In this document: positions 52,515 through 53,870 of the stretch, in pieces
Layout of the letters: each line of letters starts with the position of its first letter
Position numbering within the stretch: the stretch's first letter is position 1
Assembly (NCBI RefSeq): GCF_016432865.1
Contig: NC_067401.1
Location: 181,598,001-181,662,000, forward strand
Length of the DNA: 64,000 nt
Source: Antechinus flavipes
Taxonomy: Eukaryota
Direction of reading: 5' to 3'
Program-made: the position numbers and the translations under genes
The notes under the pieces: generated by a model
What the model was told of the DNA's origin: nothing
Databases searched by the model: none
Seen by the model: only the letters and a program-made list of their open reading frames with translations

Positions 52515-52844
52515 AAGGTATTAATAGTATCTTCCTCCCAGCGTTGTTGTGAAGAGCAAATGAGATCATTATAAAGTACTTATCACAGTTACTGGCACAC
52601 AATATATCAAAGTTAGTTGTCATTTTTGGTATTGGTGTTATTAGTATTGATTTCCCATTTGTAAGGATACCACACAATAGAAAAATACACCATTAAATTA
52701 CCCTCCCAATGGACAGGAAATTTTAAGAAAAATATATGAGCTAATGTAGCGCATATCTAGCTAGATTGTGCAATTACAGCAGTCATACTTATTGGTATGC
52801 CAAAAGGTAAAAAGTGTACACAGGCTCCCTTTAAATATGTGAAG

Positions 52845-52860
52845 GGCTCTGAAAAGAGCC
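52845..52860 (-). terminator. Orphan histone stem-loop with downstream element and no histone CDS upstream
   Basis: CAAA GGCTCTTTTCAGAGCC CTTCA...AAAGGGAGC on minus. No histone ORF between 52860 and 53970. Confidence 0.85.
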
Positions 52861-53619
52861 TTTGAGTTCAAAATGAACTATAAGCTATAAGCGTCAATCA
52901 ATCTAACAGAAACTCAGGAGGTTCACAAGGACATCAAAAAAGTCTTGTTAAACTCTTAATACAGTATCTAGTCTTCACTTTAAGACTTTAGATGGAAGGA
53001 AGCACTGAAAAAACTTCCTAGATTACTGTAGAAGCTTGAGTGCTCTCTGGGTAAAACCCCTTCATTTTACACGTGAAACTGAGGTCCAATATTAAGAGGG
53101 TTGTGCTAGATGACAACAGGAAACAAAGAATAAACGCATGTGCTCTGACTCAAAAGCCTTGATCATCCCACCACACAATTCCATTTCTATTAAAAAAAAC
53201 AAAACAAAACACTCCTTACAAATGATAACCAGATTTGGAAAAGTTTTTCTTGCCCATAAATACATCGATCACCCAACTATTATTGTTTTAAGAGATAAAA
53301 CAAGTTCTTACTTTGAGAATTAGGATAGTTATTACTGAGTGAACGATTATTCGAAGTTTGCTGGGAAGTGTTTTTGGATGGGATGTTTTGTTTGTGTGTG
53401 TGTGTGTGTGACAATTTTGGATCTCCAAAGAGACATAACATTTGTTTTTTCCCCCGACCTGAAGGAAAGCTTTGTAATAGGGCCAAGTAGGATCTGCTGC
53501 AAAACGTTCGAGTAATAGTCAATTTCATTAACTAAGACAATGCCGGCATCAGCTTCGGTACAAAAATTTTAAAAAATATTCATTTAGGGCTCCCTTTTCT
53601 AGGGCCTTCTTCTAGACTG

Positions 53620-53870
53620 CCTTCTTCCCGCCCTCTACTTTAAAAATTAAAGACTCACTCATTGGTTCTGATCTATTCAAATAAAGGTTTGTGAAAGTCT
53701 AATGTCTAATTGGATTTATTAAAAAAAAAAAAAAAACTATCCAAATGGGAGGGACTATGTAAATGAATGGATTCTAGCTCTACTTTTTAATTGGTTTGTT
53801 CATCAAAAGATGTTTGCAACCAATCAAGCAGCATCATTTACTCTACCTCTTGAAGGTATAAGTTGCTGCG
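53620..53870. promoter_or_regulatory. CCAAT-rich histone promoter with elements facing both ways
   Basis: ATTGG near 53661, 53710 and 53791; CCAAT near 53820; ATTTGAAT on minus at 53675-53682; GC box near 53626-53633. Confidence 0.6.

What the first reader, a model, noticed from the sequence alone, without database searches (positions are those of the whole stretch)
52824..53870. Orphan histone 3'-processing signal: intact stem-loop and HDE with no histone gene, facing a shared promoter
Seen: the minus strand has CAAA-GGCTCTTTTCAGAGCC-CTTCA followed by AAAGGGAGC, a complete SLBP hairpin plus a U7-type element. The 52 nt at 52824-52875 match the reverse complement of the H2A 3' end at 54408-54459 at 45 of 52 positions. 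No histone CDS lies upstream; that interval holds a MIR fragment, a CA tract and AT-rich DNA. A CCAAT-rich promoter with an ATTTGAAT element on minus sits about 0.8 kb upstream. Known: this signal directs SLBP/U7-dependent, poly(A)-free 3' end formation. Inference: this is either the remnant of an inverted H2A paralog that lost its CDS, or a divergent transcript of roughly 750 nt from the H2A promoter that is processed like a histone mRNA. The second option would be an SLBP-bound non-histone RNA, possibly an S-phase-regulated decoy. A perfect hairpin behind fully decayed sequence hints at selection or gene conversion.
Basis: partly seen in the sequence, partly recalled or inferred. Interest (0 to 1): 0.8.

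Follow-up and report, generated by a model that had tools for sequence, protein, structure and literature searches.

The report
Gutted H2B partner with H2A-type hairpin
An intact histone mRNA 3'-end signal with no histone gene in front of it is real, but it is most likely a leftover of the lost H2B partner of the neighbouring H2A gene, carrying a 64-base inverted copy of that H2A gene's own 3' end, and nothing yet shows that it is used.

Summary
A canonical histone stem-loop lies at 52845-52860 (-), with an HDE core at 52824-52832 (-). No histone ORF precedes it. About 0.8 kb upstream sits the CCAAT-rich promoter of an intact H2A gene (53977-54369 +).

What it most likely is:
- The promoter is a bidirectional H2A/H2B promoter. 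It is homologous to the two other H2B upstream regions in the window up to a shared ATTTGAATA box (53674-53682 -).
- Beyond that box the H2B transcription unit is gone. Only a weak, collinear H2B trace remains (p about 0.02-0.03 in two scoring schemes, not significant in a third).
- The hairpin sits in a 64-nt patch (52812-52875) that is an 83% inverted copy of the neighbouring H2A 3' end, not an H2B-type end. A short gene conversion or small inverted duplication is the simplest origin.

Three related species carry the region. It diverges there at the same rate as a silent flank. Per-site changes in the hairpin could not be read.

The only RNA library available has no contig over the hairpin.

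A processed, SLBP-bound non-coding RNA is therefore not excluded but is unsupported. This is an ordinary relic with one curious feature. This scan's notes name gutted or partner-less histone genes elsewhere in this genome, but no other orphan hairpin.

The parts
52812..52875 (-). 64-nt H2A-type 3' patch, an inverted copy of the H2A 3' end at 54408-54471
   Evidence: 53/64 identical, E 2e-11 to 2e-13. 43/52 to this H2A against 27-33/52 to the eight other stem-loop flanks in the window.
52845..52860 (-). Histone stem-loop (6-bp stem, UUUC loop), preceded by UCAAA
   Evidence: Exact match to the consensus. Rfam Histone3 32.1 bits. The hairpin forms in the centroid fold.
52840..52844 (-). 3' flank CUUCA. 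The predicted cleavage is after the A at 52840 (inferred).
   Evidence: Read from the sequence. The position follows from the established rule that histone pre-mRNA is cut about 5 nt after the stem. Not tested.
52824..52832 (-). HDE core AAAGGGAGC, 12 nt after the stem
   Evidence: Identical in sequence and spacing to the HDE of the intact H2A at 54451-54459.
52876..53673 (-). Interval between promoter and hairpin: 37% GC, CpG-poor, no histone ORF, no AATAAA or ATTAAA on the minus strand
53285..53651 (-). Possible collinear trace of an H2B coding region. The best block is 53450-53559 against H2B CDS nt 169-281.
   Evidence: Local score 18 against a null from real window segments, 11/400 as high. 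Chain score 45, 5/300 as high; a second scheme is not significant, 109/300. nhmmer top hit has E 1.7. Suggestive only.
53050..53083 (-). Short SINE/MIR-core-like fragment
   Evidence: (pair I7). Raised contig depth in the 53000-53099 bin.
53393..53410 (.). (TG/CA)n tract
53674..53682 (-). ATTTGAATA box, the last element shared with H2B promoters. It sits at the TATA position, 88 nt before the ATG in the intact H2B.
   Evidence: Invariant in all three H2B-side promoters. Homology ends immediately after it.
53674..53860 (.). Bidirectional H2A/H2B-type promoter with CCAAT boxes and an octamer-like element
   Evidence: 62-63% identity to 39494-39676 and 19502-19664.
53977..54369 (+). Intact H2A gene that shares the promoter
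   Evidence: 130-aa ORF. The exact protein is found in many vertebrate assemblies.
54408..54471 (+). 3' signal of the H2A gene, the likely source of the patch
   Evidence: Rfam 33.9 bits. Its 3' UTR aligns with that of the H2A at 11709-12187 through the stem-loop, so it is native to H2A.

Best explanation
This is the relic of the H2B half of a divergent H2A-H2B gene pair. The shared promoter survives because the intact H2A gene (53977-54369 +) still needs it. The H2B transcription unit was destroyed long ago by deletions and insertions. The stem-loop plus HDE now at 52812-52875 (-) is not the original H2B end. It is a 64-nt inverted copy of the neighbouring H2A 3' end, placed there by a short gene-conversion tract or a small inverted duplication. 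Because that copy is younger than the decay of the coding region, its signal positions still look perfect without any need for selection.

Shown: the anatomy, the homologies, and the presence of the region in related species. Inferred: the order of events and the copying mechanism.

If leftward transcripts from the bidirectional promoter reach the signal, they would probably be cut there by the SLBP/U7 machinery. I take that to be a by-product, not a selected function.
For: - The hairpin and HDE are real and far beyond chance.
- The patch is specifically related to the adjacent H2A 3' end: 53/64, including 10/10 bases upstream of the conserved CAAA and the unusual C directly after the stem.
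- That H2A 3' end is native to H2A, because it aligns with the 3' UTR of another H2A in the window.
- Five H2A-H2B pairs from other vertebrate assemblies show no such resemblance between their two 3' ends.
- The promoter aligns with the upstream regions of the intact H2B and of an H2B pseudogene, up to an invariant ATTTGAATA. Homology then stops.
- No H2A coding trace is found. An H2B trace is weak but collinear, on the right strand and in the right place.
- Internal comparator: the H2B pseudogene at 19746-20125 keeps about 90% of its protein sequence, yet its hairpin is already broken. A perfect signal behind a vanished CDS therefore needs a later copy, or selection.
- Inverted-repeat homogenisation or recent inverted duplication occurs in this cluster: the H4 arms 33976-34284 and 44459-44767 are 100% identical.
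- Contigs of three related species span 52465/52488-53183. Mismatches are 0.9%, 2.4% and 5.6%, the same as in the silent flank 51000-51930 (1.2%, 3.0%, 5.2%). The region is therefore real, older than those splits, and evolving at the background rate overall.
- The only RNA library has no contig over 52600-52999.
- In human cells SLBP binds no non-histone RNA, and histone pseudogenes and other stem-loop matches are silent (PMC4604434).
Against: - Within the patch, presumably unconstrained positions differ from H2A at 8 of 29. The stem (12), the three A's before it and the HDE core (9) differ at 0 of 24.
- A rough Poisson estimate from those counts gives about 0.02 for the strict core and about 0.2 for all 35 signal positions. 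This is my hand calculation, post hoc and on small numbers. It is a hint of constraint that a simple 'copied once, then neutral' model does not fully absorb.
- The H2B-side ATTTGAATA box is intact, and there is no AATAAA or ATTAAA on the minus strand before the hairpin. A leftward transcript could therefore plausibly reach the signal.
- RNA-library contigs of a related species cover about 53142-53701 but almost none of the silent flank, so something near the promoter may be transcribed.
- The H2B trace is not significant under every scoring scheme.
- Per-site conservation of the hairpin in relatives could not be read, because the difference table was truncated.
Confidence: 0.58

Rival explanations
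1. The signal is used. Divergent transcription from the H2A/H2B promoter makes a non-coding RNA of about 0.8 kb, which SLBP and U7 snRNP cleave after the hairpin. That would give an S-phase, poly(A)-less, SLBP-bound non-histone RNA, or at least a terminator that stops leftward read-through toward the H3 gene at 47878-48288. Selection keeps the hairpin and HDE intact.
For: - Hairpin, 5' flank and HDE are intact, with the same spacing as in a working gene.
- The H2B-side ATTTGAATA box and CCAAT boxes are retained.
- There is no canonical poly(A) signal on the minus strand between 53671 and the hairpin. About 1.6 would be expected by my estimate, so this is weak.
- 0 of 24 core signal positions have changed, against 8 of 29 neighbouring positions.
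- RNA-library contigs lie in 53142-53701 in a related species.
Against: - No RNA contig covers 52600-52999, including the hairpin.
- The RNA contig at 53465-53701 runs upstream of the expected start site and its strand is unknown. Its depth is 3-4, in a metatranscriptome that may contain DNA.
- The promoter is explained by the H2A gene alone.
- The region as a whole diverges at the flank rate.
- In human cells no non-histone SLBP target exists (PMC4604434).
- The Rfam score is below the gathering score, and the 3' flank CUUCA departs from ACCCA.
Confidence: 0.14
2. It is the remnant of a whole inverted H2A paralog. An inverted duplicate of the H2A gene once lay here. A later deletion removed its coding region and left only the last 64 nt.
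For: The patch is H2A-type and inverted relative to the H2A gene. Inverted duplicates exist in this cluster.
Against: - There is no H2A trace in the interval (288 of 500 shuffles score as high). The patch's free positions are still 72% identical, so a coding region of the same age would be easy to see.
- The promoter side next to the interval is H2B-type up to the TATA-position box.
- This route needs an extra, precisely placed deletion.
Confidence: 0.2
3. It is a chance match or an assembly artefact.
For: None found.
Against: 12 stem-loop matches against 0.12 expected. The 64-nt match has E about 1e-11. Independent contigs of three other species span the site, with too few gap letters for the patch to be absent.
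Confidence: 0.01

Closest known systems
Divergently transcribed H2A-H2B gene pairs with a shared promoter (here 39024-39416 / 39765-40145; the same layout in loci L001, L002, L004, L005, L007)
   Same: A bidirectional CCAAT-rich promoter of about 0.3 kb, an H2A gene on one side, and a stem-loop/HDE signal facing outward on each side.
   Different: The H2B ORF is missing. The distance from promoter to hairpin is about 0.8 kb instead of about 0.5 kb. The outward signal on the H2B side is H2A-type.
Histone pseudogenes in histone clusters (for example human HIST3H2BA and HIST1H2APS1; the window's own H2B pseudogene at 19746-20125)
   Same: A dead member of a histone cluster lying next to live genes. 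Such human pseudogenes are reported as unexpressed and not SLBP-bound (PMC4604434; bioRxiv 10.1101/720235).
   Different: Ordinary pseudogenes keep a recognisable ORF while their signals decay. The one at 19746-20125 has lost its ATG and has a broken hairpin. Here the ORF is gone and the signal is perfect. It fails the HGNC pseudogene criterion of 50% identity over 50% of the ORF.
Silent stem-loop matches outside expressed histone genes in the human genome (28 further stem-loop sequences in Brooks et al. 2015)
   Same: The consensus hairpin is present in the genome without evidence of use (PMC4604434).
   Different: This one also has an HDE at the right spacing and lies downstream of a histone-type promoter, so its potential for use is higher.
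H2AX (H2AFX) bimorphic transcript
   Same: A histone stem-loop used outside the standard 'short intronless gene, one end' pattern (PMC4604434).
   Different: H2AX encodes a histone. The present unit encodes nothing recognisable.

Membership tests
Histone 3' UTR stem-loop (Rfam RF00032) with HDE | 6-bp stem GGYYYU/ARRRCC with a 4-nt U-rich loop | tested here: met
   Exact consensus at 52845-52860 (-). The hairpin is present in the centroid fold.
Histone 3' UTR stem-loop (Rfam RF00032) with HDE | A-rich 5' flank (CCAAA) | tested here: met
   UCAAA.
Histone 3' UTR stem-loop (Rfam RF00032) with HDE | 3' flank ACCCA | tested here: not met
   CUUCA. The intact H2A neighbour has CCUCA. The seven other distinct gene-associated signals in the window (the two H4 copies are identical) start with A or G.
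Histone 3' UTR stem-loop (Rfam RF00032) with HDE | Score at or above Rfam's gathering threshold (34 bits) | tested here: not met
   32.1 bits, E 1e-6. The intact H2A scores 33.9, also below threshold.
Histone 3' UTR stem-loop (Rfam RF00032) with HDE | Purine-rich HDE about 12-15 nt after the stem, able to pair with U7 snRNA | tested here: inconclusive
   AAAGGGAGC is identical in sequence and spacing to the HDE of the intact H2A. Pairing with this species' U7 was not computed, because there is no U7 sequence in the window.
Histone 3' UTR stem-loop (Rfam RF00032) with HDE | Lies within about 100 nt after a histone stop codon | tested here: not met
   No histone ORF within 1.1 kb upstream on the minus strand.
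Histone 3' UTR stem-loop (Rfam RF00032) with HDE | Bound by SLBP and cleaved in a U7-dependent way | not testable with these tools
   Needs CLIP, 3'-end mapping or a processing assay.
Divergent H2A-H2B gene pair | Shared bidirectional promoter homologous to other H2A/H2B promoters | tested here: met
Divergent H2A-H2B gene pair | H2B ORF opposite the H2A ORF | tested here: not met
   tblastn finds nothing. Only a weak nucleotide trace remains.
Histone pseudogene (HGNC definition) | [quoted passage not shown] | tested here: not met
   No protein-level hit. The definition is quoted in bioRxiv 10.1101/720235.
Non-coding RNA with a histone-type 3' end (no described family) | A transcript that ends at the hairpin | tested here: inconclusive
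   The one RNA library, contigs only and from a related species, has no contig over 52600-52999. Low-depth contigs lie at 53220-53327 and 53465-53701.

The most novel reading that the evidence does not exclude
The bidirectional H2A promoter drives a leftward non-coding transcript of about 0.8 kb. SLBP and U7 snRNP cleave it at 52840. This would be the first SLBP-bound, poly(A)-less RNA that is not a histone mRNA. It could act as an S-phase decoy for SLBP, or as a terminator protecting the cluster from antisense read-through, and it would be kept by selection in dasyurid marsupials.
Probability: 0.1. Interest if true: 0.75.

Novelty: new member of a known kind. Interest (0 to 1): 0.3.

Why it matters
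As read here, it is a small case study in how histone clusters decay. One partner of a divergent pair can be gutted while the shared promoter is kept alive by the other partner. Short inverted copying can refresh a 3' signal on dead DNA.

It would matter more if the signal were used. SLBP is thought to bind histone mRNAs only (PMC4604434). A natural non-histone RNA with a histone 3' end would be a ready-made test of what the stem-loop alone confers on an RNA: cell-cycle coupling, stability, and competition for SLBP.

Tried and rejected
- **Whole inverted H2A paralog.** No H2A similarity in the interval, so it is down-weighted.
- **Native H2B 3' end.** The patch is much closer to the H2A end than to the H2B or H2B-pseudogene ends. 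H2A/H2B pairs of other species show no resemblance between their two 3' ends.
- **Wider palindrome around the H2A gene.** The flanks on both sides of the patch show no similarity. The inverted-repeat scan finds only the 64-nt pair.
- **Orthologous loci through the exact H2A protein.** Seven loci came back, with contigs of 100-196 Mb from assemblies I could not identify as marsupial. None has an orphan hairpin, so they served only as controls.
- **Relatives' contigs through ORF products of the region.** None of six ORFs is in the protein collection.
- **Metagenome scan for the hairpin with its unusual 3' flank.** Empty.
- **nhmmer with an H2B CDS profile.** With --max it reported nothing. With relaxed filters the top hit was in the right place but had E 1.7.
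- A first MIR motif search with fixed spacing missed the site; variable spacing found it. In one search my H2A query was one base out of frame, so the H2A protein rows there are void. For H2A the absence of a trace rests on the DNA comparisons.

Full report
**Setting.** The window is a replication-dependent histone cluster.
- H3 at 9001-9411 (-)
- H2A at 11788-12180 (-)
- a frameshifted H2B pseudogene at 19746-20125 (+)
- H4 at 34133-34444 (-)
- H1 ending at 38443 (+)
- a divergent H2A/H2B pair at 39024-39416 (-) and 39765-40145 (+)
- a second H4 near 44.5 kb (+, partly masked)
- H3 at 47878-48288 (+)
- H2A at 53977-54369 (+)

A scan for the histone hairpin gives 12 matches against 0.12 expected by chance. 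Ten are distinct sites, because two near-palindromic ones are counted on both strands. Nine of the ten lie just 3' of these genes. The tenth is the reported one, at 52845-52860 on the minus strand.

**The observation.** It is correct in every checkable detail.
- The minus strand reads UCAAA, a 6-bp stem with a UUUC loop, CUUCA, seven more bases, then AAAGGGAGC.
- Rfam's Histone3 model scores it 32.1 bits (E 1e-6). The intact H2A next door scores 33.9 bits. Both are just under the gathering score of 34, because both have C rather than A directly after the stem.
- The stated 45 of 52 match to the H2A 3' end is exact and extends to 53 of 64 (52812-52875 against 54408-54471).
- tblastn with the window's H2B, H3, H4 and H1 finds no coding remnant between 52000 and 53977. 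My H2A query was one base out of frame. For H2A the absence rests on the DNA comparisons, which find nothing beyond the 64-nt patch.

**What lies upstream.** The 0.3 kb between the interval and the H2A start codon is a bidirectional H2A/H2B promoter.
- It aligns with the intergenic region of the intact H2A/H2B pair and with the region upstream of the H2B pseudogene, at 62-63% over 170-190 nt.
- In a three-way alignment the CCAAT boxes, an octamer-like element and an ATTTGAATA box are shared. In the intact H2B that box ends 88 nt before the ATG, at the position of a TATA box.
- In the orphan unit it lies at 53674-53682 (-), and homology to both H2B genes stops immediately after it.
- The lost partner was therefore an H2B gene, and the break lies at about its transcription start.

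**Is anything left of H2B?** Perhaps.
- A local alignment of the intact H2B transcription unit against the interval gives one block, 53450-53559 (-) against CDS nucleotides 169-281. It scores 18.
- No mononucleotide shuffle reaches that score (0/500). Among real non-genic segments of the window, 11 of 400 do.
- A scoring scheme that allows long gaps chains collinear blocks from 53651 to 53285 and is exceeded by 5 of 300 real segments. A second scheme is not significant, 109 of 300.
- nhmmer with a six-species H2B profile puts its best hit at the same place and strand, but with E 1.7.
- I treat this as a suggestive trace, not a demonstration. No comparable signal exists for H2A.

**Where the hairpin came from.** The 64-nt patch is specifically related to the 3' end of the adjacent H2A gene.
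- It matches 43 of 52 anchored positions there, against 27-33 for each of the eight other signals in the window.
- The matches include ten of ten bases upstream of the conserved CAAA and the unusual C after the stem.
- The H2A gene's 3' UTR aligns with that of the H2A at 11.8 kb through the hairpin. The sequence is therefore native to H2A, and the direction of copying was from H2A to the orphan.
- The intact H2B and the H2B pseudogene share a different 3' flank.
- In five H2A/H2B pairs from other vertebrate assemblies, the two 3' ends resemble each other only in the universal consensus.
- Similarity does not extend beyond the 64 nt on either side.
- The patch runs through the cleavage site and HDE, so it was copied from DNA or from an uncut precursor, not from mature mRNA.
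- A short conversion tract or a small inverted duplication is the simplest origin. The cluster also holds a pair of 309-nt inverted arms at 100% identity around its two H4 genes, so inverted copying happens here.

**Why the signal looks perfect.** The H2B pseudogene at 19746-20125 is a useful yardstick. Its protein reading is still about 90% identical to H2B, yet its ATG is lost and its hairpin is already broken. Uniform decay cannot give a vanished ORF with a flawless signal. The signal must be younger than the decay, or it must be under selection.

Within the patch the differences from H2A fall as follows:

| Segment | Differences |
|---|---|
| Upstream 10 nt | 0 of 10 |
| 5' flank | 1 of 5 |
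| Stem | 0 of 12 |
| Loop | 1 of 4 |
| 3' flank | 1 of 5 |
| Spacer | 4 of 7 |
| HDE core | 0 of 9 |
| Downstream 12 nt | 4 of 12 |

I took the 8 of 29 free positions as the neutral yardstick and allowed change on the orphan lineage only at signal positions. A hand Poisson estimate then gives about 0.2 for three or fewer changes in all 35 signal positions. It gives about 0.02 for none in the 24 strictest ones. That is a hint of constraint at most, and the choice of positions is post hoc.

**Relatives.** The run search found the stretch in six coded organisms, with word shares from 1.00 down to 0.09. I laid contigs of three relatives on 51000-53976.

| Organism (run) | Span of the single contig | Mismatches (count) | Silent flank 51000-51930 |
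|---|---|---|---|
| D (X7) | 52488-53183 | 0.9% (6) | 1.2% |
| E (X8) | 52465-53183 | 2.4% (17) | 3.0% |
| F (X9) | 52488-53147 | 5.6% (37) | 5.2% |

- The locus is therefore real and predates these splits.
- Taken as a whole it drifts at the background rate.
- The gap letters (5, 22 and 45) are too few for the 64-nt patch to be absent in any of the three.
- Whether the hairpin itself is unchanged in these species remains unknown, and that is the main gap in this report.
The tool warns that a filter can cause this, so there is no positive control for H2A.

**RNA.** One RNA library was available, a metatranscriptome of organism F kept as contigs.
- It has contigs at 53220-53327 and 53465-53701, at depth about 3-4 and 96% alike.
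- It has nothing over 52600-52999.
- It has nothing in most of the silent flank 51200-51699, apart from depth 2.5 in one 100-nt bin.
- Something near the promoter may therefore be transcribed in that species.
- Against the processed-RNA reading, the larger contig runs 20-60 nt upstream of the expected H2B-type start, the strand is unknown, the depth is at the assembly limit, and the hairpin is not covered.
- This neither shows nor excludes a processed RNA. A stable hairpin-ended RNA should have been covered at its 3' end at least as well as at its 5' end.

**Could it work if transcribed?** Probably.
- The HDE has the same sequence and spacing as in a gene that is presumably functional.
- The hairpin forms in the centroid fold.
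- There is no AATAAA or ATTAAA on the minus strand between 53671 and the hairpin; the first is at 52028.
- From start to hairpin is about 0.8 kb, about the length of an H1 gene.
- From established knowledge of the pathway, SLBP on the hairpin and U7 snRNP on the HDE direct cleavage about 5 nt after the stem. The predicted end is therefore at about 52840.

**Comparison with what is known.**
- In HeLa cells SLBP was bound to no RNA other than histone mRNAs. Histone pseudogenes were unexpressed. [quoted passage not shown] Silent hairpins are thus the rule.
- The present unit is not a pseudogene by the HGNC criterion quoted in bioRxiv 10.1101/720235, because no ORF survives. It is best called a relic of a gene pair.
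- Notes of this scan mention a 'histone graveyard with reciprocal partner loss' 125 kb away and a gutted H1 with a preserved promoter elsewhere in this genome. I did not check them. They suggest that such relics are common here.

**Verdict.** The finding is real. Its most likely reading is a gutted H2B partner whose 3' signal was refreshed from the neighbouring H2A (confidence about 0.6). A whole inverted H2A copy that later lost its ORF is a less economical variant (about 0.2). A used signal giving a non-histone, hairpin-ended RNA remains possible (about 0.1-0.15). It would be of real interest, but nothing here supports it beyond the intactness of the signal.

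Noticed in passing
window 33976-34284 and 44459-44767: The two H4 genes sit in inverted arms that are 100% identical over at least 309 nt. 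The arms are 10.2 kb apart, flank the H1 and H2A/H2B genes, and are cut off inward by masked N. This could be a recent inverted duplication, ongoing conversion, or an assembly effect.
   Followed up: partly
window 19746-20125 (+), promoter 19502-19664, hairpin near 20165-20181: An H2B pseudogene whose ATG has changed to ATA, with a frameshift near codon 51 and a broken hairpin (GGCTCTTTTCAAAAGCC). Its promoter elements are still alignable. It may be the separated partner of the H2A at 11788-12180, 7.5 kb away.
   Followed up: partly
window 11788-12180 (-): An H2A with S at position 38 and a HYKIKGK tail. Its hairpin loop is TTTG. It passes the Pfam histone models.
   Followed up: partly
window 51900-52520: A very high-copy SINE-type repeat, with contig depths up to several hundred thousand in all three relatives. 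It lies directly downstream of the orphan signal on the minus strand.
   Followed up: no
window 56168-56602 (+): A 144-aa ORF matching the C-terminal part of the DDE_1 (pogo/Tigger-type) transposase domain, 1.8 kb beyond the H2A gene.
   Followed up: partly
window 5024-5605 (-): An exon-like ORF with a RING finger and B-box (TRIM-type) at the edge of the cluster. This fits an earlier scan note that places the cluster next to TRIM11.
   Followed up: partly
window 22811-24488 (-): LINE-type ORF pieces with an endonuclease domain (Exo_endo_phos) between the histone genes.
   Followed up: partly
window 53584-53606 (-): A second AAAGGGAGCC string lies about 50 nt beyond the expected leftward start, inside the weak H2B trace, with no hairpin before it. 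It is probably chance.
   Followed up: no
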